Under the pieces are notes generated by a model. It searched no databases. It saw nothing but the letters and a program-made list of their open reading frames with translations, and was not told the origin of the DNA. A DNA stretch of 64,000 bases, from positions 21,390,001 to 21,454,000 of the forward strand of contig OZ116698.1 of assembly GCA_964199315.1 (NCBI GenBank), in the 5' to 3' direction. The stretch comes from Orbicella franksi. Taxonomy: Eukaryota. Shown here piece after piece: positions 42,287-64,000 of the stretch (the stretch's first letter is position 1; the number at the start of each line of letters is the position of its first letter). The translations under genes were made by a program, and so were the position numbers.

Positions 42287-45200
42287 TTAGAAATAGTAGT
42301 TAGGTCCAGGTGACGAGGAATCGTTGCGTCTCTGTTGGTAGCTTGTGCTGCTGCTGTACACGTGAACTGTGTTTGTCACAGATGAATTTCCTCCTGAATA
42401 AGCTGTTTGGTCATCAGCCTGTTAAAGAAGAAGACATTTTCACAGGAAGCAAGGAAACAGTGAACGGTGCAAGTAATTTCCGGCATAAGACTAACACCCA
42501 AATTGTGAGCTACTGTTTGTGACGCGCAATTAATCATAATCAAAATCGTAGTCTACTTCTGTTTAATAAGAGAATGCTCCTGGAAAAAAATACTTAAGGA
42601 GCTAACCATGGTATCTAACTGAACGGAAAACAGAGGTCGGCCAATGTTTTCTAACCAAAGAAGGTAATGACTTGGTTTTATACGAGTATTTCCCGGCACG
42701 TAACACCGGCTACACGTGTTTGTTCCGAGGTATAAAAAGGTCGCATTTTAACTCCTGTACAACTCTTGAACCACAACTCTTGTGTCGCTGGTATGATTTC
42801 TGGCGATAGTTTGGATAAAACAAGTCTTTGTGTGTGTGAAGGACATTCATGTTACCTCCTGCATGACTTCAGTTTTCCTGTCATTCAAGTGATCCAGCTT
42901 TTCACCCAGTTTCTCAAACTCTTTCTCCAGTCGATCATTGTTTGATTGTAAGGTGTCGTTGTTAGAGTACTTTGAACTTCGATCGGAAGCCTTTAAACAG
43001 AATAAACACTAAAAGAGTTAAACATGCATATATTGATTGAATAGAAGATTTTGCTGGTGTTTCCTATTGGAAAGTACAAAAAAATAATCGTTAGAAATGC
43101 AGGTATTTAAAATAGTTTTTGAGAATCTGACAACCCCGCGCCCCTCACCCCACGGGGGATTACAACACTTTAAGGGGCGGTTTCTAAGCCAAGCCACATT
43201 TGTTCTGCTGGGAAGTAATGATGTCGGCTTGGTTCTTGGTGAATGAAATCTTCGTTTATTCTAAAGACATCACTCCCGCTACAGTGTATTCAAAGCATTA
43301 GGAATTTCGAAAGACTATTTCCGACATCCTTGGAGCAAAATTTTTTAAAGAAATGGGTTTTTAAATCATTTAAAAATCGAACACAATGGTTTCGAGCAAC
43401 GCCAGCCATCACGAAAGGTGTCAAGTTGACACTGAAATCACGAGTGCTTATTTCTCCTCAGACGGGAGCAACGCATTCCAGACGATAACTACAATTGTTC
43501 ATGAAGTCAGCAAAGATAAATCAAAGGTACCTGATGATTTTTTTCTTTTTCATAGTCCGTGTTTTGCTTATTTTACCGCCTAAGATTAATTAACAATTAT
43601 TCCATGAAACCGCGTTGGATATGAAGTGATAAATAACCAACGAGCGCGTAGCGCGAGTTGGTTATGATCACTTCATATCCAACAAGGTCGAATGGAATAA
43701 TTGTTTTAGTATATTCTTAATCGGGTTTTTGCCGCCGATTTTTATTTCAACAATTTTACAGAGCGGAAAATTTTTAAACTTGGCGCACTGTTTTCCATAT
43801 AAGGTAAAACTCCGACTAATGGCTCATAGTCGGAGTTTTTGAGCCAATCAGAGAGCTAGAAATGCAATAGTCGGAGCTGAGAATATACTAATATGTAAAT
43901 GGTTTGCCATTGCTGCAACTGCTTAAAGTAAGCTTACATATATAGCTAACATGTATGCAGGCGATTACATGTTCGTTTAAGTACTATTTTCCAAGTTTTT
44001 GCTTTTTTTCGTAGGCTTTGATATTTACTTCTGAAAGTTATACTGAAACAGTTGTTCGTCAAAGGGGGAGTGAATAACTGACATTCCCTTCGCCGAATAA
44101 TGACCAATAATTTGTTAAATAAGTTCTTGCTCTAGTGTACCTGAATTATAATGCCATTTATATCTCCCTTTTTGAACTATTGCAATGTCTGCTTCGAAAT
44201 CCATATGAACAAACTGTCCTTTATTTATCAGGCCATTCCTCGATTATTAAGTTTGCTTATTTTGAGCTGCTCGTCATTGTTATGGCTAATAAAAAGGGGG
44301 TTACATTCTCAAAAAGCAGCTTCACAACCTTTGTTGCCCGCGGCATTTACATTTTCATTCAGCCGCGTTCGCCAAAACCCTTGTTATTATTCCACTGGCA
44401 CTTGGTCTAATATGTGCTTAAGGCATACCGTAATTTAACGGTACGATTTTAAAGTACATGTATTTACCTTTTGATCTCCGTTGGTGTGTGGTTCAAAGAA
44501 TGACACAGGAGGTTTTGAGGCTGTTGCTGCATTCAACTCCTGCGCAGTTTTCAACACTGGACAATTCTTTGCACTGTCCCACTGGACGAGCTCTCTGTTG
44601 TAGAACTGGGCCTCTTTTGTTGCGATTTTTAACTTCTCGTTTTTGTGTCTTAGTTCTTGGAGTTCTCGTTCCAGGAGACTTTGTTCTTGTCTTCTTGGAC
44701 TCGTCGCTTGCGGCTCATTCTTAAGCGTATTGATGTCTCTCCCAAGGCTATAGGCAATCAGTTGTTGTTCGGACAAGACGCGTTGAAGTCGCGTCTTGCT
44801 TTCCTGGAGCTCGAATATTTCGCTTCTTAAGGTCGACAAGGTATTCTCATAAGTCTTCCTTTCGTCTTGTGATCTCCTGTAAAATTCTTGTTCGAGGAAG
44901 ATCTTCAGCTCTTTAGTAATCTTTTGTGTGTTTTGCTCGATTTCCATTTTCTCGTGCTCGAATTGGTGCTCCAGCTTGCTTTTCTCCTTCTTAAAGTGTT
45001 CTTCTAATTCTGTGACCTTTCGTTCTGCCTTAGCAAGTTTATCTTTTAGCTCGGCAATTGTTGCATCTGTTGTCCTCTGATAAGCTTGAACAACTTGCCT
45101 GTTTTCTTCGCGTAGTCGGGTCACGAGTTCTTGTTTTCCTCTTTCGACTTTGTTCTTCCATTCTGCCATGTCCGCTTCGTATTTCTTCTCTAGCTCTCGT

Positions 45201-48200
45201 TTTTCCCTCGAGAAGGAGTCGGAAAGATGCGTCTTTTCTTCTCTCAGCTTCGAAAGTTCTCGGGACATAGCCTCGAGCGTGACATTTAACAATTCTTTCT
45301 CATGTTCCAGTTTTCCTGACAGTTCATCTTTGTCTCTCTGGCTTTGTTGAAGTAAAGCATCCTTCTCTCTTAACAGCATCTCGTTCTGCGTCCTCAATTT
45401 CCTTTCCTCGTCCAGCAACTGCTCTTTCTCTGTGCGGAATTCTTTCTCCAGTTTGTAAAGGGAATCTTGCAGTTCCTTCTCACGAGTTGACACTTCCGCT
45501 GTTATCTTAGCCTGGTATTCAAGACGGAGTTTCTCTTCCATTTCCTCTCTGTAGGTTTTAAATTTTGCCTCCATATTCAACTTGTCTATTTCAGAACGTT
45601 CTATGAGTTCAAGCCTGTGTTTTTCTCTCACATCTGTCAACTTCATTTCTAACTCATACTCTATCTTTCGGCGTTCTTCAGTATAACGGTAGGTCAATTG
45701 CTCTTTGGTCCTTTCAATCGTCCTATCTAAGTCGTGGATCCTGCTCTCCAGTTCCGACTTGTTCCTTGTTAGGGTAAGTATCTCGGAGTTATACCTCTCC
45801 TCGATTTGAGTATACCTCTTTTTCTCTTCCTGTATTCTTTTGTTGTAGTCCTCGATAAGCTGCTTCTTTTCTGCCAGCAATTGCTGTTGCAGGTCGTTCT
45901 TCTCCTTTTCAAGTTCTTTCCGTACCTTCTCTATCTCCTTGCTGGTAACCTCTCTGAAGCACTGCTCGCGCTCATAGCGAACTGTGTTTATCTCGTGTTT
46001 GTAGGTTTGTTCGAGTTGGTTCAGTTTTCTTTCACACAGTTCTCTTTCATTTGTTGCTTCTTCTTTCAAATCCTTTAACTGCTTTTCGTAATCTTCCTCT
46101 AAAGTTTTCTTTTCCCTTGTAAGAGTTTCTCTTTCTTCTCGATGTTTGAACTGGATCTCGTCTGTTTTTCGTTTCCATTCTCTGCTCTTTTCTTCAAGAA
46201 TGTAAGACTTCTGTTGCAGTTCTGATCTCAACGTTTCAGCCTTCTTTCTTTCAGTCTCGTACTTCTCCATTAAGCTTTGTAGCTCAAATTTGAAATGCTC
46301 CTCGTTTCTTTTCTTTTCTTCAGCAGCACACTCGACAGAATCTTTGAAGCGTCTAATAACGCTCTCTTGCTCACTAATGACCTTTTGCAGTCGTTCCACT
46401 TCCCCAAGTGCCTTGTCTTTTTCACTGACGAATTTTCCCCTTTCGGTCTCGTGAGTCTTTTTGAGTTGTTCTATCTCGCGTTTAGACGTTTCCTCTGAGT
46501 CTGAAAGCTCTTTAGCAAGTGAATCTAATTCTTCTGTCAGCCTTCTGTTCAGATACTCAAGCTCTGTTATCTTTAATTTTAAGTCGCCGTTTTCTTGGTG
46601 AAGCTTGTTCTCCTTGGCTGTCAAACTCTCAAGTTGAGAACGTGAGCGGAACATTTCGTTGAGCATCTCACGGTTTGCTATTTCCAGCTCCACAGAAACC
46701 TTTAACTTCGTCTCGTAGTCTTTTATTTTCAAGTTGAGCTCGTTAATCTCCGCCTTATTTTGCTGTTCATTCTCGTTAGCAAGTCGTTCAGCCTCTTCTA
46801 ATTGCAAACGCAACTGTTCTGATACATTATTCAACTTTCTGTTTTCGTCTTCAAGCTTCTCAATTTTGCTTTTAAACGCGAGGAGTTCCTTCTCCCATTC
46901 TAGATTTTGTCTGGTAGCTTCCTCTTCGAGTCTTGCCACAGTTAACGTCAGCTCTCCAACCGTCACAGTAAGCTCCTGCTTCTCTTTTTCCAACATCTCA
47001 TTAGTTGATGTCTGATCTTCCAGTTTCTTTTTCAAACTAGCCACAGCATCCTCGTGTTCACTTTTTCGGTCATTCATTTGTTTTTCGTGACTGTTCTTTA
47101 AATCTGTCATGTTGTTTACATGTTTTTCCTCGGCATTGCTGTACTTTCTTTTCCAATTTGTCACTTCCCTCAAAAGCTCTTGAATTTCATTATGTAGCTT
47201 GCCTTTCTCCTGGACTTCTTTGTTCAGCTCGTCTTGAAGTTTCGATACCTGTGACTGACACTTCGATTCTGTCTCCTTTCGCTCTTTGATAATCCGTTCT
47301 TCGTAATTACTTATAATCTCCTTCTTGGTCATTTCAAGACTTTGTATCCGACCAAAGAGACCCTTCTTTTCCTTTTCCAACTCGGAGATTTTTTGCTTTA
47401 GCGCGGCTACCTGAGCATCAAATTCTTCCTGACTATCTGTTAGGTTGTTTCGTACTCGATCCAAATCTTTTTCTGTTGCTGCCAGTTGCACGTTTTTCTG
47501 TTCAAGCTCTTCTTTCATCTGCCCAATAATTTCCTTGAGATTGGCCAGTTCTCTCTCATATTTGATCTTATTGTCTTCCATCCACTTCTCTCGTTTCTTT
47601 GTTTCTTCTTTCAGCTCAGCTGTTTCTGTTTTATGACGAGCAGTTTCTTCTTTGTTCTTCCTATCCAGATTTTGGCAACTTTCTGCTAGTCTCTCGTTTT
47701 CTTTTGTAAGCTCTGTTATCTTCAGATCATTCTGGTTTTGCAACTCCCTGATCTTGCTCTCGAGATCTCTTACGGTTTGCTCTAGTTTAGAGATGACAGC
47801 CTCTTTTTCGCTTTTCAGTTGCTGTAACTTCTGGTTGTGTTGGGTCTTTAACTGTTCTATTTCCTTTCTGAATTGTTTTTCGAGCTCGAAATTCTCTTTT
47901 TTGAACTTTTCAGTCATCTCTTCCTTCAAGGCTTTTATCGTTGTCTCATACTGCTCTCTTAATTTTAATGTTTCTTTACGGAGTTTGTCAAGCTGTGCTT
48001 GTAGTTTCTTTTTCTGCGCCTCGAGCTTGTCTTTTTCCGCTGTAAAATGGGAATTTCTCTTCTCAAAATCTTGAAGCAAATCTGTAATCTTCATTTCGTA
48101 CTTCTTCACAATTTCGCTCTGTCTCTCGATTAGTTGTTGTTTTTCATGGTCGAAGTTTTCTTCAAGCTCGCTCTTTTCTTTGTCACACTTCTCTTTTAAG

Positions 48201-50620
48201 GTGGTTTTAATTTCTGTGATTTTAGCCTTGTAGGTCTCTTCTATTGTTGTACATTTTTTGGTCAGTTCTTCTTCTTTCCTTGAATGAATCTCTTTTAAGG
48301 CTTCTTTTTCTTCCCTTAGTTTGTCCAGTTTTAATTTCAGGTCATCTTGCAAATCGGTTATTTTCTTTTCGTACTCAGTTACAGTTTGTTCGTGAGTTTC
48401 GGTTAACTGATTTCTTTCATCAGCAAATTCCTTTTCCGCGTCTTCCTTTTCCTTCTCATATTTTTGTCGCAGTTCTTTCTTGGTGTCTTTTATGAGCTGT
48501 TCATACTTATCGATACTGTTAGACAACTCTTCCCTTAAACCTTGAATCTTCTCTTTGTACTTTTCCTCATGACTCTCCATGGCGGCTTCTAAATCTGCCA
48601 ATTTCTTCTCGTATTTCTCTTTGATTCCAGCTATTTGTTCTTCGTATGCTTTCATTGTGCTTGCATTGGAAGCTTTCAGTTCCTCTATCTGTTTTGAAAA
48701 GTTTGATTCTAGTTCTGTCTTTTCTTTGTTGCACTTTTCAGTAATTTCTTCTTTAAGCTCCTTTATTTTCAATTTATGCTGTTTCTCTGACTCAGCCATT
48801 TCTTGTCTTAATGCCTCTATTGCTTTCTGGTGTGACTCCTTTAAGCTCTTCCATTCATTTTCCATCTCCTCGACTTTTGCATCCAGTTCTTCTTGGAGAA
48901 TGACAATCTTTTCTTCGTATTCCTTTACCACTGCATTGTGTGATTCTATCAAGGTAGTCTTTTCTTTGGCCAATGTTTCTTCCATTTCACTCTTTTCTTT
49001 ATTGAATTTTTCCGTCATCTCGTCTTTCGCATCTTTCAGTTGTTTCTCATGACCCTGTTTCAATGCCAGTATTTCTTGTTCCAGTTTTTCGATGTTGGTT
49101 CTATTGGTCTCTTCCAGTCGTTCCTTTTCTTTCTCTATCTGAGCTATCTTAACTTCGTATTCTTGCTGCATGCTAGTGATTTTGGTTTCATAAGCTTTGA
49201 TCTCCATCTTATGACCTTCAATCAGTTCTTCTCGCTCTTTCATAAAGTTTGCTTCAATCTCGTCTTTCTCTTTTTCCAATTTTTCTAACAGCTCTTGCTC
49301 CAGAACTTTCATGTCTTCTTTGTCCTTTTGTTCAAGGGTCGTAAGCTTCTCCTGGCACGATTCAATTTCCGCAGCATGTTTATCTATTAACTGTGTTTTC
49401 TCTGCCTCCAATTTCGTAATAGCCAACTTGTTTTCCTTTCTTATTTCTTGGATTCGGACTTCACTTTGCTGGATGAGTTTCTTGTATTTGGCGATCAATT
49501 CTTGCTTTTCTGTATCGAACTCGTTTTCCATATCATTCTCCTTCTGTATGTACTCCATCTTTAGCTTATCCTGAAGTTCCTTCATCAATAAGTTGTGGTT
49601 TTCTTCAAGCTCTTTGCACCTCCTCTTCAACTCTGCTATTTCCTCCAAAGAACTATTGTAACTTGCCTCAAATTTATCCTTCTGAGTTTTGAGTTGTTCT
49701 AACTGTTCTTCGTATTGCTGAGTGATAGAAGTTATCTTAGCCTCGTATTCTTCTAGAGCCTTTTCGTGTGCTGCTATAAGCGACTCTTTCTCTTTTGTGC
49801 ACGCAGCTTCCATCTCACCCTTTTCTGCTTGGAACTTTTCCGTAAGCTCAATTCTCAAGTTGGCCAGCATTTCTTCGTATTGCTTTTCAAGAGCAGAGCA
49901 TTTCTCGCGCAGTGTTGTTACCTGTGTAGTGAGGCTAGCATTTTTCTTTTCTGATTTTTCTTTGTCGATTTTTAGTTGCCCTAGCTTCGTTTCGTAATCT
50001 TGCTGAATCTGCACTATCTTGATCTCATATTCCTTTGTGCTCTTCTGATATGTCTGCAACAAGGCCTCGTTTTCCGCTCGCAGAATCTGTATCTGTTCCT
50101 CGAAATTATCTTGCATTTCATCTTTTTCGCTCGAAAACCTTGCCTCCATCTCTCCCTTCTCCATCTTGCACTTGTTCGTGAGCTCTCTCTTTACATCTTC
50201 AATCATTCTAAGATTCTCTATCTCCATGGCGGAAATTTTCTGTTTGAGTCGTTGAACTTCTCTTTGGGACTCATTGTACTTTTTCTGCCAATCGTCTCTC
50301 TCTATTTTAAGTTGCCCGAGTTTGACTTCGTAATCCTGGATGATCTTTGTTTTGTTAAGCTCATATTCGGTGACAGATTTTTGGTACATATCGTTAAGGG
50401 CTTTCTTCTCTCCTTCCAGCGTTTTTATCCTTTGCTTGAGGGACTCTACTTCTGCACTGTTATCCATTGGAATTGTTCCCACGACCTCCATGTCCCAAGT
50501 TCCCCCTTGGTCTTCCATTGGCATTTCGTTGGTGACCACAGAGTAGTTAGTAGGCTCTACGTAGTAAGGACCTCCCCAACCATCTATTGGTTGTGACTCA
50601 TGAATTTCGACTCCAGACAT
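42287..50620 (-). CDS. Giant coiled-coil protein B (about 2139 aa), no recognisable catalytic domain
   Basis: Exon 44468-50620 (2051 codons, donor AAG|GTAAAT), exon 42856-42990 (ASDRSSKYSNNDTLQSNNDRLEKEFEKLGEKLDHLNDRKTEVMQE) and terminal exon 42287-42418 (ADDQTAYSGGNSS...PGPNYYF*). All junctions are phase 0. E/K/Q/L-rich sequence. Confidence 0.85.
43592..43870. mobile_element. Palindromic interspersed repeat in a gene B intron
   Basis: Hairpin 43592-43705: AACAATTATTCCAT..TTGGATATGAAGTGAT..ATAACCAAC / GTTGGTTAT..ATCACTTCATATCCAA..ATGGAATAATTGTT. Confidence 0.7.
47840..50386 (-). repeat. Nine degenerate protein-level repeats of 91-94 aa (first unit 112 aa) in gene B
   Basis: Recurring H/Y-x6-YE-x-KI...E(L/M)TEK(F/C)xxEKxE(L/M)ExxFxxE(K/R)xxL pattern. 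Unit lengths counted as 112, 94, 94, 91, 91, 91, 91, 91, 94. Confidence 0.75.
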
Positions 50621-51698
50621 CTCGGTTATTTTCTTGCTAACTGAATTTAGACGATGGCAAAAAATTTATACGTGGATTCAGTAAATTTATAACGATCGTT
50701 GCAAATAGCATTATTTATTTAGAATCATTATTCTTAATCTTTGCAACGATATTCTAAAAATAGGTTGGTGTACCCTGCTACTCCTGAGAAATCCAATGAG
50801 TTAATGGCTTAAAGGGACATAGTGAGCTGGCGCACATGCTCATTAGATACCATTTTATAGCTAATTTCCAAACTGTTTTTAAGCAAATATGAAAAAATAA
50901 TATCATAGGATGACCAAAAGCACACTCAAAAACAGATTTTTCAGTAAACGATTGAAAATCAAGTTAAACACTGCGAAGATTGAAGCGGATTTCTAGATGA
51001 ACTCGACGGGTATCTTTGATTTTAGGTTGAGCTGAACTCTTTTCAGAAAAAAAGTGTCCAGGTCAACGCGATCCCAAAGCTGAATGTGTCCCTTAAATTG
51101 ACCACATCGCGCTGTTACATATTTTAAATAGCATATCTGCGCAAAAGCAACCATCAGATGTAATGTATGAAAAAAATCAAATGTCGCCAACATCTTAACA
51201 CGTACAGTGTATTCCACTAAAATCTTTTTTTTCGGTCCATCACAAATATCAAGGTTTAATGGAGGGCTTACAGTTAGAGATAGGTCTATGCTGAGATATA
51301 TGTTTGATTGCATCTAAATATTTCATGGTAAAATGGTTTTTAAAAAAAAGATTTTTAGAAAGGAAAACGTCAAAAGAAAATTTAAGTGTTGAGATTAACA
51401 ACAAATATTTTGTCTGAATATTTCATTAACCATTGATAAACAGTTGCTTTTTAAACAAGTATGTTCTGCGGACTAATTTTCGAGATAGGAAATGAGTACC
51501 TGTACTTTGAAATATTGATTGAAATGGGCATATTAATAAGACATTCAAAGCTAACCTCGAACCATTTTTACTCCTTCAGCTATACCAAAATCCTAACCCT
51601 AACCTATTTCGTGACATGTAAAATGATTATGTCCCGTTATATTGTACAAATGCTATACTGATGAAGCCAAAGCTTTTCGCATATTGTAGCTAACTTAC

Positions 51699-51980
51699 CT
51701 GAGTTAAAGTTCTGGTGTTCCTTCTTTAAATTTTGATTCCTTGGCACTCTTTTTTGCGCACTATAGCTACATCTTTATCAAAACTCTCTTATCAAATGCT
51801 TTGGAAATTCAAACTGTTAAGAAAGACTCAGTTGTTTGAAACTCACGGTAAACAGCGGACAAAAAGGTCGACTCTGCTGTTACAACTGGAAAGGCTTGTT
51901 GCAGGATGTAAACAGTTCGGTTACAATTTATGTTAATATTTTTAGCGGTACCAAATTAATACAAGACATCAGCCAATCAG
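51699..51980 (-). promoter_or_regulatory. Candidate promoter and 5' UTR exons of gene B
   Basis: Donors CC|GTGAGT (51846) and CAG|GTAAGT (51698), acceptor GCTATAG near 51761, acceptor TTCAG at 50641 (20 nt upstream of the ATG), and a CCAAT element AGCCAATCAG at 51971. Motif-based inference only. Confidence 0.35.
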
Positions 51981-53159: not shown

Positions 53160-53290
53160 AGGGTTACCCACAACATTAAAATTCGCCGGTACCCATTTAT
53201 CCACCTGGGGAGAGAGAGGCAATGTGAGAGTAAAGTAACTTGCCTAAGAACATGAGGCAGTGACCCCTGCCAGGGTTCGAAGACGCACTC
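53160..53290 (-). mobile_element. SINE fragment, reverse orientation
   Basis: GGGTTACCCACAACATTAAAATTCGCCGGTACCCATTTATCCACCTGGG..GTGAGAGTAAAGT..CTTGCCTAAGAACA..CAGGGTTCGAA is the reverse complement of the SINE head and body. Confidence 0.7.
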
Positions 53291-54827
53291 CTTGAACAGC
53301 AGGTTTAAGCTTATAAGACTTAATTAGATGTGGAATTGGAATAGAAAATGCTCCAATTATTTGAATTACTTATCTGCAGAAAACATTCCCAGAAATTAAT
53401 TAAGTACGTAAAAAAGTAATTGATTGATTAATTGATTGATTGATTGATTAACTCGAAGATCGATAGCTACACTAGAGAAGACAAAATTACATCGATGTGA
53501 CTACTCTGAAAACCCTTTATTTACCTTGAATAATAATAAAAGTAAAAGATGTCCGATAGCGCTTAACAGTGAACAAATTTCTTAACTGGTTACCTAAGCT
53601 ACAAATTACAAATTATAAAACAATAAATTACAATCATATTATAGCAAAATTTCAATTCAAACAATTCAATTAGAAATGCAATAAAATCCTTGACAATAGG
53701 ATGGCCTACGACTCAATTATACAATTCAATTATATATTTAAAGATATCAAGTTAATTTCAATAAAACAAGAAAAAAATAACCCATTATATTTGGAGACTG
53801 TCAATCAGAACTTGACTTCTAAATATACTAACTATTACTAGCGTAATATACCAAAAGAACTACAGTGGCTTATTTGTTGAAAGGCATTTCATAGTCAAAT
53901 GTCTCAAGTTTCTAACTGAAACACAGGCATTTACGGAATCAATTCAGCAGCATTTTCACCCTGCATAACAAACCAAAAAAACGAATCTAATCAGTCTTAT
54001 ATTAGTCAAACTAGTCGGTTTTAAAGCGTGTACCTCAAGGAACACGTAATTTACCATCTCTAAGAAAATTCATTTTCTATTGCAAAAGGTCACGAACCAC
54101 GGCTTTCTGATCTCTGTTTCTGTTCGGTTTCAGTTTTATTAATATATTTTGACAAACAAAAAAGTGTTCTACTACACCCTCACCTTCCCATAATGGCCAG
54201 TTCTGTACAACGGACGCTTCCCTCTGTCCACAAGGTGGCTGTTGTGGAAAGGTTCGACTGTATATTTATCAAGATAGTAAAACAACTCTTCAACAAATCA
54301 ATTTTAACTGACTTACATTGTTAACCCTAATTTCATAACTTCCTTGACGCCTCGTTTTAAAACACTGGATCAAGATATTTATAACATTAATCGGGGCAAC
54401 AAGCAAAGTTTCAGGATATCCCCAAAAAGGTAACCGAAAGATTTTCGATTGTAATTATCCTATCAGAAACATCAAGAATCATGGCTGAAGTGACACCTAA
54501 GCTCCATACCATAGCAAGAATTCTTGTGTTCAATATTTTCCCCAAAAAGAGTGCCCCAAGGCAATTCTTGGACAATAAAGTCCATCTGAGGACGGTATTT
54601 GTCTCTCGAGTGAAAAAGATCTTTTAATTGCTGTATACACTACCGAAAGGTAAAGATATCATTTTCTGGCGCTATTTCTTAAGATTAGAAATCTGTCGGA
54701 GTAGCGCGCGGGATTTGTACTTAAATAGATTCCTAGTTAATACCCACTTGCGACAAATTTTATCACGAAACGTGATGGCGTCACTAGAGTTGACGCAAAG
54801 CTATTCAACACACCCATAAGAAATACA

Positions 54828-54969
54828 TAGAGCGATTTTCAATTGAGTGTCGTAAAACCAAAACCAAAACCAATTAGACTTCTCAGGTAATCTCAAACTG
54901 TAGTAAAACCAAAACCAAAACCAAAGTAATTGTCTAATTACTTTCGACATTCAACTGAAAACCGCTCTA
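54828..54969. mobile_element. Short MITE with TA-flanked inverted ends
   Basis: TAGAGCGATTTTCAATTGAGTGTCG versus CGACATTCAACTGAAAACCGCTCTA; internal AAAACC repeats. Confidence 0.75.
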
Positions 54970-55673
54970 TAGCGTTAAACTAACATATCCTATCCCAAAA
55001 GGAGCGGAATGCGCTACTTCTCCTTCTTTTTTTATGTCTTAACAGCTGCAAGACACGTATTTCATCTTCACTTTCCATCATGAAATACATGGTAAAGTAA
55101 ACAACCTAATCTATATAACCTCCTCAAATTACTGTAACTATCCAAATGGACTCGCTCAGTAGAACAAAATGAAGTATTTTGCAGACGCACCTCTTTAAAA
55201 AACATTCTCAAAAATTGAGACAATAAATAGCAAAAGCGTATCAACATGTAAAGCTCGAACAAAGCGTTATAGCTTAATAAAATTTCCTACAGAAAAATAA
55301 ATTTAAATAATCTTTTAACGTCAGTGATACAATCAAAATTCCCCTTGGAGATCATCTTTGCAGAGCGTGTCAAATCTTATGTCCGGTGGTGTAGTTTTTT
55401 GACTCTACTTCCAATAATTGACTACTAGCTTTAGTTCCTTGTCATTTTTATACATCATTACTACGTTAAAATCCCGCTCTTTGTCACTGCGAGACTTAAA
55501 TGGCGCCTTTTTTGTGCATTTGATGAATCTGAAGTCATTTCAGGTGGCATTGTTGGTACTAATAGCGATAATTCTCATGTGATATTTTTATTCTAGTTTT
55601 TTTTTTTTCCTGAAGAATAATTCATTCTTGTCTTCGTCCTATGTAGCTAAGCCGGAGCTTAAATTGTTGATAA

Positions 55674-58600
55674 TCATGTTAGCTGGGGAGTCGATTGCTG
55701 ATTCTCTCCTGCACTAAAAGAAGTACTTTTCATGTCTTCTGAAGTGAAATTCCCACCCTCGGTACTCTTTACAAATCGCGTATTTTCGAGATGGCTATTG
55801 GCCGAAACATTTCTGCTTCCCAGAGAAGTTCCCATTGCTTGGTTGAACGAGTCAGTGATTGTTGGCTCACTTTGCCGCTGGCCAGTACCCGTGCCTCCAA
55901 CGACTCCTCCGCTGGATAGTCCACCAGAGCCTGCCAATGGCCTTCCAAGTGCATCCGAAATGCTTCCTGTTGCGTGCATGGTGTATCGAACCCTTTCTAG
56001 TATATCGCCATACGATTGTCCAGTACCTATCAAAGACTGGCCATTTGTTGTGTTAAATATGGGACAAAGGTTTGGCTGAAACACCCTGCTCTCAGATCTC
56101 ATGCTACCAATGTTTGGACCAAGTGAAAAGTCGTTAGCTCCTCTGATATCTGACTCTCCGTAGTATCCTAGATTTGACCGTAGCACATCGTTTCTGCTTA
56201 TGCTCTGTAGACGAACGTTGTAAAATACATTACGTAAGTGTTGACGCGACAAACCAATTTCAACATTACATAGTAGGTGCAATGTGTTACTTAATGTATT
56301 CGAACCTCAGCGTTTTTGACTTGATAAAGAAAAAGTAGACATGCATTCTGCTTCTTGTAACTTTGGTAGACAGAGAAGAGAGATTAAAACGAGTCTAAGA
56401 TTTGTTTAGTTATATAAAGTGCCTCACCCACTCCTCCCTAGTAGCCGCCTCCAAATCCTTGTTACGTGTTTCCAAAGTCCTCAGTCTGTCTCCCATAACT
56501 CTGAGTTCTCTCTCAAGCCTCTCCGTTTTGGCCTGAAGTGTCATGTTCCTTTGCTCCATTAAGTTAATTTGGTCTTTATACTGTCGAACGTCGGATTGTG
56601 ATGACTGATGGGATATCTCAGAGCTAGCCTGTTGAGAAACCAAATGAAAAACCTTTCAAAAAAGCATCATCAAACACTTTTAAGCAACTTCGTCTGAGTG
56701 ATTTATTAGTGAACTCACCAAAGCATTTTTAATTGTGTTTGCCATCATATGTTTCCCAATAACATCAGTTCTTTTCTCCATTTCTTCCCTCGCTTTGCTA
56801 AGCTTTCGTTTCATCTCCAGTTGTATTTTCTCCAATTCGTCTTCAAGCTCTTGTTTTTCGTTTTCAAGAGTTTCTTTCAATTCAGTTCTTTCTCTCTTCA
56901 GTTTATTAATTTCTTGCTGAAGTTCTCTAATCTTCTCCTCCATTGGGCGTTTCTCGCGATCTACTCGCTCGAAGAACTCTTGTTCCATTTGAATTACTAC
57001 TCTGTTTCTTGACAACTGCTCTGTTCTTGGACTGGAATTTCCCGACAACTCGTTCTTTAGCAACTTTTCCTGAATTTCTTTTCTCTGATCTTGCAAGAAA
57101 GAGATTTGCTTTGTTAAGGCCTTTACTGTTTGCTCAAATTTTTGTTTTTCATCATTCAACGTTTTTCTGTATTCCCGTTCCATTATCATCTTTAACTCTT
57201 CCTGGCTTTGGATGAGGGTCTTTTCGGCATTGCGCTTTTCTTCCAGGTATCGCGTTTTCTCACTCTTGTGTTGCATTTCCATTTCTTTGAACTTCCGTTC
57301 CGTTAATGACATCTTTCGTCTAAATTCATCGATTGTTCCTTGTAATCTTTTCCTTTCAGAAGCCAACCGTCCTTCGTTATCTTCTCTTATCCGAGATAGT
57401 TCGTCATCTTTATCTCTTGCAACTCTATCGCGCAAATTGTTCTTTTCTACCTCATGAATTCTGGTAAGCTTCTCCACTTCCTTTTTGTAACAGTTCTTTA
57501 ATTGTTGTTTCTCGCATTTAAGAGCATTGACTTCCTTTGTGAGAGCATGTATTGTTTCCATTAGCTTCCTTTTCTCGCTTTGCATCTGGTGTTGCAATTC
57601 TCTTTTTTCCTCCTCAAACTTTGAATGTTGATCTCTCAGTTCACCTTGGAAATTTTGCCCCCTTCTACGCATTCTCTCATTATCGTCCGTACCATATTGC
57701 TTTCTTTGTGGAACCGACATATCAGCCATGTTGCCAGAAGCATTTTGATTTCCATGCTCAACCTGGAAAACATTTCCTTGTCTTGGCATCCTGCTTTCTT
57801 CGTTAAAACTGTATTGATTCTTCTGTGTGCCAACAACAGCATCAAAACCACTTTGATTGCCCTGTTCAACTAACCAATTTTGCCTTGACATCCGAGTATC
57901 ATCGTCAAAATCATATCGGTTCCTCTGTGTGGGTGACACGCCAACCATAGCTTTCGAACCATTCCGTTCCGCAGTGCGAAGTCTTTCCTCGAAGTCGGCC
58001 CTTTCTTTGAACAGCTTGTCACTAAGAAAGTCTTGGTCTTTTCTGTGTTTTCTCTTCAAGTCGTCTATTTCGTCTTCAAGCAAACGACGATAGCTTGTGA
58101 GCTTCTCTTTGGCCTCTCTCACCTCGTCCTCTAACTTTGCCTTTTCCCTTGAGGCACGATTTAAAATTTCTCTCTTTTCTTCGTTGAATCTTCTCTCCAT
58201 TTCTTGAATTGTAGTCTCTGGCTCCCCTTCCCTAGACTGTCCATTATAGTTTTCTCTTCTCGTAATACTGGATTCGAAAGCCATTGTATCCCTTGCTCCG
58301 TTATCCCTTATTCCACTGGTTGATAGTGGCCCCCAGACTGTGTTTTTGACATTGCTATCATTTCCATATGTTCCTGGGGCATTTGCCGACCTTGCATCTC
58401 CCCCCCGGATGCTAGACTCAACGTCTCGAAGCCGCTTTTGTAGACTGCTGTTTTCCTTTTCAAAGTAATCTTCTAACGACTGTTTTTCTCTCTGAAACTC
58501 TTCTGACATTCGTCGCTTTTGTGCTTCAAGGTTCCTGAGGTCATCTGCATGCTTTTTATTGACATCTCGTAGCATTGCCTCTAGGTTTTCAACTTCTTGT

Positions 58601-61600
58601 TTTAATTTGTCATCTTTAGAATGAACAACCTGGCTTCTAAAATCCCCTGATATACCATATGAGTTTAAAGCATGGGAAGACGATGTCCCGTTTAAGCCTC
58701 TACTCTGGGGCCCAACGTTCGCCGATATTTGGTCTTCTAACCGCTGAATTTTCTCTTCAAGTTTTCTCGTTGTGTCTGTTTGTACTTGAAGTTTTTTCTC
58801 GCAAGCCTCTCTCATTTTTGTTACTTCTTCTACAGCTCTTGCTTTTTCGTTTTCGTAATTTCTTACCAAAGAAATCTTTTCCTGTCTGAAGGAATCTTCA
58901 ATATCTTGGATTTTGCGGGTGAAGCGTTCAGTTTCGTCTGTAAGCTTCCTGTTACGCCTCTCAACTTCGTCTAGAGTACGAGATAAGTGATCAACCTCGC
59001 GAGTTAGATTCCTTTGAGCAGCCAAAAGTTCATCTCGCTTTCGAGTCAGATGGGTGACCTCTTCGTCAAGATCGTCGTTTCTCCTCTTTAGCTCTTTGTT
59101 TCGCTTGGCTTCTTTTTTCAAATCCTCGAGTTTCTCCTGAAGGTCTACTATTTCACTTTGTAATTCCTTTTGCGTTATTGCCCGTTCGTTGTTATTTCTT
59201 GAAGGCACCTTCGTTTCATTTCGATTCGAAGAAGTCTCATTATTCTTTAAATTGTCAAAAACATCTTCGTTACGACCATTTCTGTTACCAGAGAGAATTT
59301 CATTCATCTTGTATAAAAGTTTCTTGTTTTCCATCTCTAGTGTTTCTCGCCGTCGAATTTCGTCGGTTAGCTGTTGCTGAAAATCACTGTTACCCCAACC
59401 AGGTGTTGTATTCACTTCCCTTTGACCGCCTGTAAAGCTGAAATTATTTTCCTGGTTGGAAAAGAGCCCACTTTTAAAAGCTTCAGCTTCTTGTCTGCGT
59501 TTAGTTTCCTCTATCAGCGACCTCTGCAATTTGCTTATTTGTGTGAGATATTCCTGGGTAATTTCGTTAGCTTGTCTTTCTATCATGGCCTTAATTTCCA
59601 TTCTTTCGCGAGTGAAATCCTCTTGCAATCTTTGGTTTCTTTCTTTAAGGTCCATGATATCGCTTAGCAAGTACTTCATATCACTGGCGAGTCTCAGCTT
59701 ACTTCTTCTCTCATCTTCGTACCTTTGACGAGCCATTTCAGTATCTTGGTATTCCACCTCTATCCCATGATATCGATCTCTGCCACTGGTTGATGAAGTT
59801 CTCAGCTCTTCTCTAAGTCTACCCCTCTCTTCTTCCAGCCGTTCTATTTTGGATTTTAAGTCTTTTTCTTGATTCTTTGCAAGCATTGTATTTGAAAGCT
59901 GAGTTTGTAGTCTCATTTCCATTCCTTGAATTTCGTCTGAATGTCTTTTCTTGAGGTTTGCAATCTCGTCGTCCTTCTCTTCGAGGATTCGTTCGTTGTC
60001 TTTTAAAGATCTCTCCAATTTCCGGGCTTTCTCTTTCAAACGAGACATCTCTGTTGTTGATTCCCTTCTTATCTCCTCTATCCTCTCTTGTTGATGCTTG
60101 TTTGTTCTTTTCATCTCTTTTATTGTTCCCTCTTGCCTCGCTCTTTCTCTTTTTAGCTCAATAAATTCATTTTCCCTCGCTAAACCAAGCTCGATATTTT
60201 TCAGACTTTCTTGGCTCTCGTTCTTCTTGCTCAAAACGTCAAGAATTGCTCTAAATTCTCTGTTTTCCTTCTCTAATACACGGATGTTTTTCCTATATTC
60301 TAGGATCTCTTCTCCGTCATCACCTTGGTCTAATGTCATACTACTTATGTCTAATGTGTGGGTCGTCATTCTTGACTTTGCCCAGTCATTCAGTTTGCTC
60401 TGCAACAACTCATTGTCCCTTCTTAGGGAGCGAATGGTTTCATCAAATCGATTAATACTGTCCAACATTCCTTGATATCTTTCTTCAAGATAAATCTTTT
60501 CGCCGTTTTCATTTCGATATTCTTTTTCAAACTCTTCCTTCTGCCTCTTCTCTGCTTCATATGCTTTTTCCAAACGTTCCTTCTCACGCTTTATTTGATC
60601 ACATTTAGACTTGTAGTACTCATAGTCAGCTGACATCTGGTTTGAATTTCTAAGAGTTTCTCTTGCACCGCCATGGATATCACAAACATAGTTGTAACCA
60701 CAGCCACGCACATCGCCGTATTCGTCCAGTGAAACCTCGCGTGAACTTGTGATGTACTCTATCAAGCTGCTGTAATCTTTTGCGATATCGCAGCAATGGT
60801 GGTGATCTTGAGGAATGGTTAATTGTTCTCTGTGTGAAATTAACTCTGTTTCTTTTTCATGGCGTAGCGCATCATAACGTGCTTCTAGGAACTCTTTGTC
60901 TTTCTCAAGTCTGCTAATCCTCTCCACAAATTGATCTATTAGTATGTCATGATGGCAGGTTACTTTTTGTGTTACGGGAGACCTGATTTCCTGTGTTTGT
61001 TTAGACGTATTTGTTTCATCTTCGGTATCCTTATCAACTTCTCCTGATTTCGGCAGGTCCTTCTTGCTCTCGATTTCTTTTCCTGGTTCTGTAATTGTTC
61101 CATTCGGTTCTCCAGTCGTTTTTGTAGTTACAGTGTTCCTATCATGTTTTTTGTCATTCTCCTGTAAAGAAGTATCTTGGATGACTTCACTGGAATCAAT
61201 GAGGCCTACTTCTTCTATGCTCCAGCTTTGGTCAGGGTCTTTCTCGTCTACAGTTCCAATGACTTCCACACTCCAGTTTTGTTCTGGTTCTTTTTCTCCT
61301 ATCTCTCCTATTTTCTCTATGGTCCAAGTAGATTCTGTTTTATTTGGCACACCTGAATCCTCTAGTTTCTTTTCCGCAGGCAGCTTCTCCTCTTGAATGT
61401 CATTTGAGTCTAGTGGCATTTCTTTGACTTCAATCTCTTCCATGGGCAGTTGTTGTTCTTCACTAGAATCAATAGTACCTACTTCTTCTGTACTCCAGCT
61501 TTGGTCAGGGCCTTCCTCGTCTACAGTTCCAATGACTTCCACACTCCAGTTTTGTTCAGGTTCTTGTTCCCCTATCTCTCCTATTTCCTCTGTGGTCCAA

Positions 61601-64000
61601 GAGTCTGCGATATTTGGCACATCTGAATCCTCTAATGTCTTTTCCGGAGGCAACTGCTCCTCTTGAATGTCATTTGTGTCTGATAGCATTTCTTTAATTT
61701 CAATCGCTTCTGTGGGCAGCTGTTGTTCTTCACTGCAATCAATAGTACCTACTTCTTCTATATTCCAGCTTTGCTGCTCCTGTGTATCTACCCCTTCCGC
61801 AAACCCATTCATCTGACTACTTTGCATATACCCTGGAATTTCCTGCATGGACATTTTTTGCATAGCCATTTCACCTCCCGTAGGCATTTCTTGGACAGTC
61901 GTTTCTCCTCCCATAGGCATTTCTTGCACAGTCGTTTCTTCTCCCATAGGCATTTCTTGCACAGTCATTTCTCCTCCCATAGGCATTTCTTGCACAGTCA
62001 TTTCTCCTCCCATAGGCATTTCTTGCACAGTCATTTCTCCTCCCATAGGCGTTTCTTGCACAATCATTTCTCCTCCCGTAGGCGTTTCTTGCATCGTCGT
62101 TTCTCCCAGAGGCATTTCTTGCATCGTCGTTACTCCTCCCACAGACATTTCTTGCACAGTCATTTCTCCTCCTACAGGCATTTCTTGCACAGTCATTTCT
62201 CCTCCCATAGGCGTTTCTTGCATCGTCATTTCTCCTCCCGTAGGCATTTCTTGCATCGTCTTTTCTCTTCCCATAGGCATTTCTTGCACAGTCATTTCTC
62301 CTCCCATAGGCATTTCTTGCACAGTCATTTCTCCTCCCATAGGCATTTCTTGCATCGTCATTTCTCCTCCCATAGGCATTTCTTGCACAGTCATTTCTCC
62401 TCCCATGGACATTTCTTGCACAGTCATTTCTCCTCCTACAGGCATTTCTTGCACAGTCATTTCTCCTCCCATAGGCGTTTCTTGCATCGTCATTTCTCCT
62501 CCCGTAGGCATTTCTTGCATCGTCTTTTCTCTTCCCATAGGCATTTCTTGCACAGTCATTTCTCCTCCCATAGGCATTTCTTGCACAGTCATTTCTCCTC
62601 CCATAGGCATTTCTTGCATCGTCATTTCTCCTCCCATAGGCATTTCTTGCACAGTCATTTCTCCTCCCATGGACATTTCTTGCACAGTCATTTCACCTCC
62701 CATAGGCATTTCTTGCATCGTCGTTTCACCTCCCAGAGGCATTTCTTGCATCGTCGTTTCACCTCCCATAGACATTTCTTGCACAGTCATTTCTCCTTCC
62801 ATAGGCAGTTCTTGCATCGTCGTTTCTCCTCCCATAGGCATTTCTTGCACAGTCATTTCTCCTCCCATAGGCATTTCTTGCATCGTCATTTCTCCTCCCG
62901 TAGACATTTCTTGCATCGTCATTTCTCCTCCCATAGGCATTTCTTGCACAGTCATTTCTCCTCCCATAGGCATTTCTTGCACAGTCATTTCTCCTCCCAT
63001 AGGCATTTCTTGCATCGTCATTTCTCCTCCCATAGGCATTTCTTGCACAGTCATTTCACCTCCCATAGGCATTTCTTGCATCGTCGTTTCACCTCCCAGA
63101 GGCATTTCTTGCATCGTCGTTTCACCTCCCATAGGCATTTCTTGCATCGTCATTCCTCCTCCCGTAGGCATTTCTTGCATCGTCGTTTCACCCCCCATAG
63201 GCATTTCTTGCATCGTCATTTCTCCTCCCATAGGCATTTCTTGCACAGTCATTTCTCCTTCCATAGGCGTTTCTTGCATCGTCATTTCTCCTCCCGTAGG
63301 CATTTCTTGCATCGTCGTTTCTCCTCCCATAGGCATTTCTTGCACAGTCATTTCTCCTCCCATAGGCATTTCTCTCACAGTCATTTCACCTCCCATAGGC
63401 ATTTCTTGCACAGTCATTTCCCCTCCCATAGGCATTTCTTGCACAGTCATTTCTCCTCCCATAGACATTTCTTGCACAGTCATTTCTCCTCCCATAGGCA
63501 TTTCTTGCATCGTCGTTTCACCTCCCATAGGCATTTCTTGCACAGTCATTTCTCCTTCCATAGGCAGTTCTTGCATCGTCGTTTCTCCTCCCATAGACAT
63601 TTTTTGCACAGTCATTTCACCTCCCATAGGCATTTCTTGCATCGTCGTTTCACCTCCCAGAGGCATTTCTTGCATCGTCGTTTCACCTCCCAGAGGCATT
63701 TCTTGCATCGTCATTTCTCCTCCCGTAGGCATTTCTTGCATCGTCGTTTCACCCCCGATAGGCATTTCTTGCATCGTCATTTCTCCTCCCATAGGCATTT
63801 CTTGCACAGTCATTTCTCCTTCCGTAGGCATTTCTTGCCCAGTCATTTCTCCTCCCATAGGCATTTCTTGCACAGTCATTTCTCCTCCCATAGGCATTTC
63901 TTGCACAGTCATTCCTCCTTCAACAGGCGTTTCTTGTATCGTCATTCCTCCTTCAATTGGCATTTCTTGCATAGTCATTCCTCCTTCAATTGGCATTTCT
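55674..64000 (-). CDS. Giant coiled-coil protein A with Met-rich repeat N-terminal region; 5'-truncated by the window (more than 2670 aa)
   Basis: Frame is open from the window edge to 56719 (2427 codons, donor TTG|GTGAGT). Next exon 56428-56628 (ASSEIS...TLQAKTERLERELRVMGDRL..., donor TGG|GTGAGG), then terminal exon 55674-56204 (SISRND...PQLT*). All junctions are phase 0. Confidence 0.85.
61195..61775 (-). repeat. About 2.2 copies of a 270/273-bp (90/91-aa) acidic coding repeat in gene A
   Basis: The anchor CCAGCT (Ser-Trp codons on the minus strand) recurs at 61765, 61495 and 61222, giving spacings of 270 and 273 bp. Confidence 0.9.
61861..64000 (-). repeat. Coding 33-bp minisatellite, about 65 units visible, consensus QEMPMGGEMTV
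   Basis: Unit CAAGAAATGCCTATGGGAGGAGAAATGACTGTG repeated in frame to the window edge, with one 30-bp unit (MPLGETT) and no stop or frameshift. Confidence 0.97.

What the first reader, a model, noticed from the sequence alone, without database searches (positions are those of the whole stretch)
42287..64000. Tandem pair of giant coiled-coil paralogues with a shared hidden architecture
Seen: both genes end in a giant exon, then a short phase-0 coiled-coil exon starting Ala-Ser, then a Ser/Gly-rich terminal exon. The short exons align (TLQAKTERLERELRVMGDRLRTLETRNKDL versus TLQSNNDRLEKEFEKLGEKLDHLNDRKTEV, 11/30). A late block of the giant exons also aligns ungapped (EKRNAEKTLIQSQEELKMIMEREYRKTLNDEKQKFEQTVKALTKQISFLQDQRKEIQEKL versus EKMEIEQNTQKITKELKIFLEQEFYRRSQDERKTYENTLSTLRSEIFELQESKTRLQRVL, 18/60). 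Each paralogue expanded a different part: A the N-terminal Met and Trp motifs, B a 91-aa rod repeat. I cannot match them to rootletin, golgins, myosin tails or any named family. Inference: an uncharacterised structural two-gene system (filament, tether or ruler, perhaps a hetero-oligomer) with tunable module length.
Basis: partly seen in the sequence, partly recalled or inferred. Interest (0 to 1): 0.8.

Follow-up and report, generated by a model that had tools for sequence, protein, structure and literature searches.

The report
Giant coiled-coil gene family in corals
The two neighbouring coral genes are real, transcribed paralogues. They belong to an unstudied family of giant coiled-coil proteins that has so far been named only in stony corals and sea anemones. 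This chromosome carries five members, one of them an 8,123-codon single exon, and their cellular role is still unknown.

Summary
Gene A (about 3,093 aa) and gene B (2,139 aa) lie in tandem on the minus strand. Each has a giant exon, a short phase-0 coiled-coil exon and a low-complexity tail exon. RNA contigs support A's two 3' introns, and B has its own 5'UTR exon. An Acropora locus conserves all four short exons.

The shared C-terminal block is about 320 aa, not 60. BLASTP gives E = 1e-13, and both this block and the short exon score above every composition-matched rod piece tested. The heads are related too, through an EMPM unit and a W-x-x-E-x-[VI]-G motif.

It is a family, not a pair. A profile of the C-terminal domain finds five loci on this chromosome. 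One is an 8,123-codon open frame directly upstream of A. Relatives occur in stony corals, Nematostella and Actinostola. Every named relative is a hexacoral protein labelled hypothetical or given an automatic name (golgin B1-like, trichohyalin-like, CEP290).

No Pfam family reaches its cut-off, no PDB sequence is related, and no named relative came from outside Hexacorallia.

Most likely these are long head-rod-tail coiled-coil scaffolds or tethers. That function is inferred. Hetero-oligomerisation remains untested.

The parts
56719..64000 (-). Gene A giant exon. It continues beyond the window to an ATG at extended window coordinate 65268. The exon encodes 2,850 aa and the whole protein is about 3,093 aa.
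   Evidence: Open frame. The start agrees with the NCBI Montipora and Acropora models. GT donor after 56719. RNA joint.
61852..64000 (-). Part of gene A's Met-rich acidic 11-residue repeat array (unit close to QEMPMGGEMTV). There are 65 copies here and about 90 in all. Residues 101-1145 are 24% Met.
   Evidence: Tandem Repeats Finder: period 33, 65.2 copies, 89% matches. Composition.
61185..61773 (-). Gene A block of W-x-x-E-x-[VI]-G-x-[IV] motifs spaced 17 aa apart, inside a 270-nt duplication. A has nine such motifs in all.
56719..57687 (-). Gene A C-terminal coiled-coil domain (CTD, 323 aa), the family-defining module.
   Evidence: Profile match of 435 bits. AlphaFold2: helix 2-212, 13-aa linker, helix 226-322, pLDDT 88.7.
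56428..56628 (-). Gene A exon 2, a 67-aa phase-0 coiled-coil exon that starts Ala-Ser.
   Evidence: AG and GT sites. RNA joints on both sides. 44/60 identical to the Acropora exon.
55674..56204 (-). Gene A terminal exon CDS: a 176-aa Ser/Gly-rich tail with a conserved block (GTGxSYxDIxERVRxTMHxTGSISDALG), then the stop codon.
   Evidence: No hydrophobic stretch long enough for a transmembrane helix.
51699..51944 (-). Gene B non-coding 5' exon, with a CCAAT box just upstream.
   Evidence: The first 246 nt of a 5,817-nt RNA contig lie here, and a second run also covers it. GT donor and downstream acceptor read.
44468..50643 (-). Gene B giant exon. The ATG is at 50620, the exon encodes 2,051 aa, and the whole protein is 2,139 aa.
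   Evidence: 53% identical over its full length to the Acropora orthologue P0001.
50471..50497 (-). Gene B single W-D-M-E-V-V-G-T-I motif, preceded by one EMPM unit. This is the head homology with A.
   Evidence: The motif is conserved in Acropora B.
47711..50464 (-). Gene B array of ten 91-aa (13-heptad) rod units, aa 53-970.
   Evidence: Autocorrelation peaks at lags 91 and 182. Unit HMM hits of E 1e-17 to 1e-32.
44480..45424 (-). Gene B C-terminal coiled-coil domain (315 aa).
   Evidence: Profile match of 341 bits. BLASTP to A, E = 1e-13.
42856..42990 (-). Gene B exon 2, a 45-aa phase-0 coiled-coil exon that starts Ala-Ser.
   Evidence: Splice sites. Conserved in Acropora. Scores above all real rod pieces against A exon 2.
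42287..42418 (-). Gene B terminal exon CDS: a 43-aa Ser/Tyr-rich tail, then the stop codon.

Best explanation
A and B are two separately transcribed tandem paralogues. They belong to an uncharacterised family of giant head-rod-tail coiled-coil proteins whose named members are all hexacorals.

The family is defined by three C-terminal elements:
- a domain of about 320 aa made of a 210-residue helix, a short linker and a 97-residue helix;
- a short coiled-coil exon with a conserved Gly;
- a low-complexity Ser/Gly/aromatic tail exon.

This genome has five such genes on one chromosome. Z, A and B lie in tandem. D and N lie about 450-490 kb away, next to a sixth related gene, here called the C-type gene.

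Inferred mechanism: the rods form long parallel coiled-coil dimers. B has about 1,900 uninterrupted helix-compatible residues, which would give roughly 285 nm. A and Z are segmented. These dimers would act as cytoplasmic scaffolds or tethers. The conserved C-terminal module would be the common assembly or anchoring end. The fast-evolving N-terminal heads would be disordered spacer or partner-binding arrays whose length changes by tandem amplification. In A the head is about 1,050 residues of acidic 24%-Met 11-mers plus nine W motifs.

Shown: paralogy, exon structure, transcription, family membership and range, predicted helices. Inferred: dimerisation, scaffold or tether role, roles of head and tail.
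For: Paralogy:
- BLASTP E = 1e-13.
- B's C-terminus hits the same collinear place in all A orthologues.
- Null tests with real rod pieces are never reached.
- The head motif is shared.
- Intron phases and Ala-Ser exon starts are identical.

Transcription and gene independence:
- RNA runs from several studies hold A.
- Spliced RNA joints exist for A, and B has a separate 5' exon in a 5.8-kb RNA contig.

Family:
- A full HMMER profile scan gave 64 hits, 40 of them at E <= 1e-10. In nearly all long proteins the domain is a single full-length match at the C-terminal end of a giant ORF.
- There are five loci in this genome.
- There are five clades, each with at least 99% support. D groups with Actinostola and N groups with Nematostella.
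- The short coiled-coil exon also follows Z and D.

Structure:
- AlphaFold2 gives two long helices with pLDDT 88.7.
- B is 95% helix-compatible, with a 91 = 13x7 residue periodicity.
- There is no TM-like stretch in either tail, and no Pfam or PDB relative.
Against: - There is no localisation, cell-type or interaction evidence of any kind.
- Coiled-coil dimerisation is assumed from composition and a monomer model.
- The one complex prediction (A CTD with B CTD) gave no verdict.
- Each of A's RNA joints rests on one contig, and unspliced contigs are also present.
- B's 3' splice junctions have no read support here.
- Most database relatives are unnamed metagenome or transcriptome ORFs. The 'hexacoral-restricted' range therefore rests on the few named hits and on the absence of named bilaterian hits.
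- An 11-residue periodicity in parts of the A and Z rods would also fit non-canonical helices.
Confidence: 0.6

Rival explanations
1. A and B, possibly with Z, D and N, are obligate partners. They would co-assemble through the shared C-terminal domain into a heteromeric filament, the way type I and II keratins pair.
For: The core of the C-terminal domain is conserved across all five paralogues. The genes are clustered and co-oriented. A and B contigs occur in the same RNA runs at similar depth. The architecture is head-rod-tail with Gly/Ser/aromatic tails.
Against: No test of binding succeeded (no verdict). The rods differ hugely in length (about 1,300, 1,900 and over 8,000 residues), which is hard to reconcile with in-register heterodimers. 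The intermediate filament Pfam model was matched by only 4 of 33 domains, with a best E-value of 9.8e-5.
Confidence: 0.15
2. They are very divergent orthologues of a known metazoan long coiled-coil protein (giantin/golgin B1, ninein, CEP290, trichohyalin), as the automatic database names suggest.
For: NCBI names on relatives: 'golgin subfamily B member 1-like', 'trichohyalin-like' and 'centrosomal protein of 290 kDa'. A faint precomputed Ninein_long_CC hit on the Acropora B orthologue. Language-model look-alikes include AKAP9, FAM184 and ninein fragments.
Against: No Pfam family reaches its cut-off on A, B or relatives, including the Nematostella 'CEP290' model, which has zero Pfam hits. The full HMMER scan returned no named bilaterian protein. 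There is no C-terminal TM anchor. The atlas hits share only 103-130 of 256 features, in the range the tool gives for chance hits or distant relatives. Two of the three named models are fusions of neighbouring genes.
Confidence: 0.06
3. A and B are exons of one read-through gene, as in the NCBI Acropora digitifera model that joins them.
For: The 3,917-aa A. digitifera model runs from A's tail straight into B's start. The genes are on the same strand, about 5 kb apart.
Against: A's terminal exon ends in a stop codon in both this genome and Acropora. B has its own 5' non-coding exon with a CCAAT box, at the start of a 5.8-kb RNA contig. No RNA joint links A's exons to B.
Confidence: 0.04
4. The A-B similarity is only coiled-coil composition and the short exons are not real.
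For: Identity is low (29%) and both proteins are Glu/Lys/Leu-rich.
Against: E = 1e-13 after compositional adjustment. Scores lie above every one of thousands of real rod pieces. The match is collinear in all orthologues. The profile finds only family members at high scores. There are RNA joints, and the exons are conserved in Acropora.
Confidence: 0.01

Closest known systems
Golgins, especially giantin (GOLGB1)
   Same: A very long, mostly coiled-coil cytoplasmic protein with a large coding exon. NCBI's automatic name for the Acropora relative is 'golgin subfamily B member 1-like'. A tether role is plausible.
   Different: There is no C-terminal transmembrane anchor and no Pfam match to any golgin-type targeting domain such as GRIP. 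There is no sequence match. The named model is a fusion of A and B.
Ninein / ninein-like (Pfam Ninein_long_CC, PF27974)
   Same: A long centrosomal-type coiled coil. There is a faint precomputed hit on one orthologue and one atlas look-alike.
   Different: No hit in any hmmscan run here. No Pfam domain of any kind, EF-hand included, was found in the heads, which are disordered repeats.
CEP290
   Same: NCBI calls the Nematostella relative XP_048587492.1 'centrosomal protein of 290 kDa'. The size class is similar.
   Different: That model has no Pfam hit at all. It is a fusion of an N-type family member (aa 1 to about 1500) with the neighbouring C-type gene.
Intermediate filament proteins and keratin-type end domains
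   Same: A head-rod-tail plan. The tails are rich in Gly/Ser with scattered aromatics: D's tail in this genome, and the Gly/Ser/Met repeats in Actinostola. The paralogues are clustered.
   Different: The rods are 4-25 times longer than the roughly 310-aa IF rod. The Filament Pfam model was matched by only 4 of 33 domains, with a best E-value of 9.8e-5. The IF consensus end motifs were not looked for by pattern.
KIF21A coiled-coil region (Pfam KIF21A_4th, PF25764)
   Same: This is the most recurrent weak Pfam match. 13 of 33 C-terminal domains hit it, always on the second helix, with a best E-value of 2.3e-7.
   Different: The scores seen were 17.7-19.8 bits against a cut-off of 33.1. There is no kinesin motor or WD40. 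It may only reflect a shared charged heptad pattern.
Met-rich low-complexity domain of yeast Pbp1 (ataxin-2)
   Same: A's head is a long disordered, Met-rich region. In Pbp1 such a region self-associates and is dissolved by Met oxidation (PMC8394241).
   Different: There is no sequence relation. A's array is strongly acidic and much longer. This is an analogy only, and nothing was tested.

Membership tests
Golgin (giantin-type tail-anchored) | C-terminal transmembrane anchor, or a GRIP/GRAB Golgi-targeting domain | tested here: not met
   The maximum 19-residue Kyte-Doolittle mean is 0.64 in A's tail and -0.28 in B's, where TM helices usually exceed 1.6. No Pfam golgin-type domain such as GRIP was found.
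Golgin (giantin-type tail-anchored) | Localisation to Golgi membranes | not testable with these tools
   No localisation data.
Ninein / NINL | Match to Ninein_long_CC plus N-terminal EF-hand region | tested here: not met
   hmmscan of A, B, P0001 and 33 C-terminal domains gave no ninein hit at E <= 1. There is only a 'faint' precomputed flag. No Pfam domain, EF-hand included, was found in the heads.
CEP290 | CEP290-specific coiled-coil Pfam domains | tested here: not met
   The Nematostella model that carries the name has 0 Pfam families at E <= 0.1. A and B have none either.
Intermediate filament | Rod of about 310 aa matching Pfam Filament (PF00038) | tested here: not met
   Filament was matched by 4 of 33 domains, with a best E-value of 9.8e-5. 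The rods are 1,300 to over 8,000 aa.
Trichohyalin / S100-fused type | N-terminal S100 EF-hand pair followed by Glu/Arg/Gln-rich repeats | tested here: not met
   No S100 or EF-hand Pfam hit. The heads are Met/Glu/Gly repeats.
Spectrin-repeat giants (nesprin-like) | Three-helix bundles of about 106 aa. Nesprins also have a C-terminal KASH domain. | tested here: not met
   AlphaFold2 predicts continuous 211- and 97-residue helices, not bundles. There is no spectrin Pfam hit. KASH_CCD scored 20.6 bits against a cut-off of 43.3. There is no TM in the tails.
The new family itself (CTD-bearing giant coiled-coil proteins of hexacorals) | A single full-length match to the roughly 320-aa C-terminal domain profile at the end of a giant exon | tested here: met
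   A 435 bits, B 341 bits. Own-genome Z, D and N have E-values of 1e-42, 2e-61 and 2e-35.
The new family itself (CTD-bearing giant coiled-coil proteins of hexacorals) | A downstream short coiled-coil exon followed by a low-complexity tail exon | tested here: met
   Found for A, B, Acropora A and B, Z, D, the P0002 locus and a Z orthologue. It was not found for N in the DNA held.

The most novel reading that the evidence does not exclude
The five paralogues would be the building blocks of a hexacoral-specific cytoskeletal system. They would co-assemble through the shared C-terminal domain into a lineage-specific filament or micrometre-scale tether.

Their heads would be sensors. A's roughly 1,050-residue, 24%-Met acidic array would form a redox-responsive or soft-metal (Cu(I))-responsive low-complexity domain. 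So would the Cys/His-rich heads and Gly/Ser/Met tails of the sea-anemone relatives. Its self-association would change with oxidative load, which would be relevant to photosymbiotic corals.
Probability: 0.1. Interest if true: 0.8.

Novelty: new variant of a known kind. Interest (0 to 1): 0.5.

Why it matters
Giant coiled-coil proteins organise centrosomes, Golgi, cilia and cell junctions, but the well-studied ones are shared across animals. Here there is a multi-gene family with no detectable relatives among the named proteins of other animals. Its defining domain is missing from Pfam, and its database names are misleading or come from gene models that fuse neighbours.

The family includes one of the longest uninterrupted coding exons one is likely to meet (8,123 codons, transcribed). 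It also includes a head domain that is one-quarter methionine.

Recognising the family would do three things:
- correct the annotation in several coral and anemone genomes;
- give a profile for finding the members;
- point to a possibly lineage-specific cell structure in reef-building corals that nobody has looked for.

Because the function is unknown, the value at present is as a well-defined lead rather than a result.

Tried and rejected
1. Complex prediction of A's C-terminal domain with B's: score 0.07, no verdict. It is not evidence for or against binding.
2. Pfam on A, B, orthologues, distant relatives, the Nematostella model and all 33 aligned domains: nothing reached a cut-off. The only recurrent weak match is KIF21A_4th.
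3. PDB sequence searches with the domain profile, all of B, and A's rod: only generic coiled-coil noise (E >= 0.0005) or nothing.
4. ESM Atlas look-alikes: AKAP9, FAM184 and ninein fragments, with recognition and shared-feature counts in the range the tool gives for chance hits or distant relatives. Treated as non-evidence.
5. Rfam on 42000-64000: no RNA family.
6. X-box (RFX) motifs in the presumed promoters of A, B and Z, as a hint of a ciliary role: none. CCAAT boxes only.
7. Literature searches by accession and by automatic name: no paper on any family member.
8. Spectrin-like bundle idea for the 91-aa unit and the C-terminal domain: rejected, because AlphaFold2 predicts long continuous helices.
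9. W motif as a known short linear motif (LC3-interacting, kinesin light-chain W-acidic, EB1 SxIP), compared from memory only: the spacing does not fit any of them. No partner is proposed.
10. Taxonomic range beyond Hexacorallia: it could not be settled, because most hits are unnamed ORFs.

Full report
THE OBSERVATION

The window lies at G000:C1:21390001-21454000 in a 497-Mb genome. The runs that hold this DNA are labelled as coral.

Two giant open frames lie on the minus strand. B is window 44435-50620 (2,061 codons). A is 56680-63999 and runs off the window. Fetching the next 10 kb shows that A's frame continues to an ATG at extended window coordinate 65268. That start agrees with the NCBI Montipora and Acropora models.

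The splice sites read from the sequence are canonical and all phase 0:
- A: giant exon to 56719, exon 2 at 56428-56628 (67 aa), terminal CDS at 55674-56204 (176 aa).
- B: giant exon to 44468, exon 2 at 42856-42990 (45 aa), terminal CDS at 42287-42418 (43 aa).

Both second exons begin Ala-Ser. A is therefore about 3,093 aa and B is 2,139 aa.

TRANSCRIPTION AND GENE INDEPENDENCE

Fourteen RNA runs from several studies hold part or most of A's 3' region. Laying four of them on 50800-56790 gave RNA contigs with joints that skip 56205-56427 and 56629-56718, with CT..AC ends on the + strand. These are exactly A's two predicted introns. Each joint rests on one contig, and unspliced contigs are also present.

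The first 246 nt of a 5,817-nt RNA contig lie on 51699-51944. A GT donor follows this stretch, and an acceptor lies 23 nt before B's ATG. A CCAAT box lies just upstream. So B has its own non-coding first exon and promoter region, and no joint links A to B.

B's 3' junctions were not covered by the single read-laying run. They rest on conservation. An Acropora-type contig (L001) carries the same tandem, and both short exons of both genes are recognisable there with flanking open-frame breaks. Identities are 44/60, 67/175, 19/45 and 14/43.

IS THE SIMILARITY REAL?

BLASTP with compositional adjustment aligns B 1764-1961 with A (window numbering 2132-2325) at 29% identity and E = 1e-13.

B's C-terminus hits the same collinear position in every A orthologue, with E-values from 1e-5 to 1e-13.

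Against nulls made from real coiled-coil pieces of the two rods:
- The C-terminal domains score 284, against maxima of 204 and 132 (0 of 400 each).
- The short exons score 61, against maxima of 56 and 45 (0 of 3,000 each).

The heads are homologous too. B starts with one EMPM-type unit followed by W-D-M-E-V-V-G-T-I. A carries about 90 units of an 11-residue Met-rich repeat and nine W-x-x-E-x-[VI]-G-x-[IV] motifs spaced 17 aa apart. The W motif is found in A-type and B-type proteins of stony corals only.

B's rod starts with ten 91-residue (13-heptad) units.

In other genera A's head consists of longer, degenerate related repeats with 3-7% Met. The regular 11-mer array has 89% identity between copies at the DNA level, so it is a recent lineage-specific amplification.

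A FAMILY, NOT A PAIR

I aligned the C-terminal roughly 320 aa of A, B and eight relatives (alignment A1) and scanned 1.84 billion representative proteins with full HMMER. This gave 64 hits, 40 of them at E <= 1e-10. In nearly all long proteins the match is a single full-length hit at the very end of a giant ORF.

The same profile finds five loci in this genome, all on contig C1:
- A.
- B.
- Z, inside an 8,123-codon open frame that ends about 8 kb upstream of A's start, on the same strand.
- D, an ORF of 1,281 aa about 450 kb away.
- N, an ORF of 1,772 aa about 490 kb away.

Z is a single uninterrupted frame, G000:C1:21463176-21487544. Fourteen RNA runs hold 78-89% of the sampled words of a 10-kb stretch from its middle.

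N is followed about 7 kb downstream by a further related giant gene, here called the C-type gene. The same N-then-C order is fused into one NCBI Nematostella model.

A short coiled-coil exon like those of A and B also follows Z, D, a D-type contig and a Z orthologue. D also has a Gly/Ser/aromatic tail.

A maximum-likelihood tree of 33 domains gives five clades, each with at least 99% support. D groups with the sea anemone Actinostola, and N groups with Nematostella. At least these two lineages therefore predate the coral/anemone split. Deeper nodes are unresolved.

The tree puts B weakly with Z. The shared head suggests instead that A and B are the closer pair and that B's domain evolved fast. 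I leave this open.

WHAT IT IS NOT

No Pfam family reaches its cut-off on A, B, their orthologues, six distant relatives, the Nematostella model or any of the 33 domains. The only recurrent weak match is KIF21A_4th, on the second helix in 13 of 33 domains. The scores seen were 17.7-19.8 bits against a cut-off of 33.1.

PDB sequences give only coiled-coil noise.

Every named relative is a hexacoral protein: Montipora, Acropora, Oculina, Stylophora, Nematostella and Actinostola. Each is either 'hypothetical' or carries an automatic name, namely trichohyalin-like, golgin B1-like or CEP290. Three of these named models are fusions:
- Acropora: A plus B.
- Montipora: A plus a domain annotated PF13359, which from memory is a transposase-type family.
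- Nematostella: N plus the C-type gene.

Neither tail has a stretch hydrophobic enough for a membrane anchor.

Most hits are unnamed ORFs from metagenome or transcriptome assemblies. The restriction to Hexacorallia is therefore the best reading, not a proof.

STRUCTURE AND LIKELY MECHANISM

AlphaFold2 with the 33-sequence alignment predicts A's C-terminal domain as one helix of 211 residues, a 13-residue disordered linker and a second helix of 97 residues. Mean pLDDT is 88.7 and there is no bundle.

A crude P/G and composition filter gave these results:
- B is 95% helix-compatible, with about 1,900 uninterrupted residues. As a two-stranded coiled coil this would be roughly 285 nm.
- A has a 1,345-residue disordered head and a segmented rod.
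- Z is 65% helix-compatible, with many breaks.

From this I infer long parallel coiled-coil dimers that serve as cytoplasmic scaffolds or tethers. The conserved C-terminal module (domain, short exon, low-complexity tail) would be the common assembly or anchoring end. The heads would be variable spacer or ligand arrays.

None of this was shown. There is no localisation, cell-type or binding evidence. The one complex prediction gave no verdict and is not used.

A speculative extension concerns the Met-rich head. Pbp1's Met-rich domain is a precedent for a redox-sensitive low-complexity domain (PMC8394241). Sea-anemone D-type relatives have Cys/His-rich heads, and one has Gly/Ser/Met tail repeats. 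This might point to redox or soft-metal chemistry. I give it about 10%.

RELATION TO EARLIER NOTES OF THIS SCAN

Earlier notes had already flagged the Met-rich 11-mer (s1-236688) and the W motif (s1-236711) on this same stretch. A note 446 kb beyond the window (s1-210830) describes a pair of giant coiled-coil genes that corresponds to the D and N loci found here.

VERDICT

It is wrong that it is a two-gene system. The family is new as a recognised entity, but it belongs to a familiar kind of protein. Interest is moderate until a cell type or structure is attached to it.

Noticed in passing
G000:C1:21463176-21487544, minus strand (L004, L016, L017); extended window coordinates 73176-97544: A single uninterrupted open frame of 8,123 codons (gene Z) lies directly upstream of A. 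It ends in the same family domain and is followed by a similar short coiled-coil exon (L003, about 9554-9967). Fourteen RNA runs hold 78-89% of the sampled words of its middle 10 kb.
   Followed up: partly
L013 (C1:21900319-21904278), L015 (C1:21945469-21949425), L007 (C1:21953250-21959945): A second cluster lies about 450-500 kb away. It holds D (ORF of 1,281 aa), N (ORF of 1,772 aa) and, about 7 kb after N, a related C-type giant gene. The N-then-C order matches the two halves of Nematostella XP_048587492.1.
   Followed up: partly
Proteins P0088, P0082, P0203: Three public gene models of family members look like fusions. Acropora digitifera 'golgin B1-like' joins A and B. Montipora 'trichohyalin-like' joins A to a domain annotated PF13359. 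Nematostella 'CEP290' joins the N-type and C-type genes and has no Pfam hit.
   Followed up: partly
Proteins P0099, P0108, P0112 (sea-anemone D-type relatives): The heads are Cys/His-rich (runs such as CCCG followed by His). Actinostola has a tail of more than 400 aa with Gly/Ser/Met repeats. Coral A keeps short His/Cys clusters just before its rod.
   Followed up: no
L003 6689-9404 (between Z and A): There are two near-identical ORFs of 342 and 432 aa in opposite orientation. Their sequence motifs look reverse-transcriptase-like, so this is probably a retroelement insertion in Z's 3' region. They were not scanned against any library.
   Followed up: no
window 54827-54868 and 53000-53400: Both stretches have very high RNA contig depth. 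At the first (a roughly 42-nt element containing aaaccaaaaccaaaacc) contigs run on into unrelated sequence on both sides. These look like dispersed repeats carried in many transcripts, not part of A or B.
   Followed up: no
L006 (metagenome contig, Z-type orthologue): Three consecutive same-strand ORFs of at least 1,083, 1,754 and 1,213 aa. Only the last carries the family domain. This is probably one very large Z-type gene split by introns or assembly errors.
   Followed up: partly
A rod and Z (protein level): The strongest short-range periodicity in A's rod and in three of four quarters of Z is 11 residues rather than 7. This hints at hendecad or otherwise non-canonical helical packing.
   Followed up: no
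window 34899-35074: A run of 176 N (assembly gap or masked). Left untouched.
   Followed up: no
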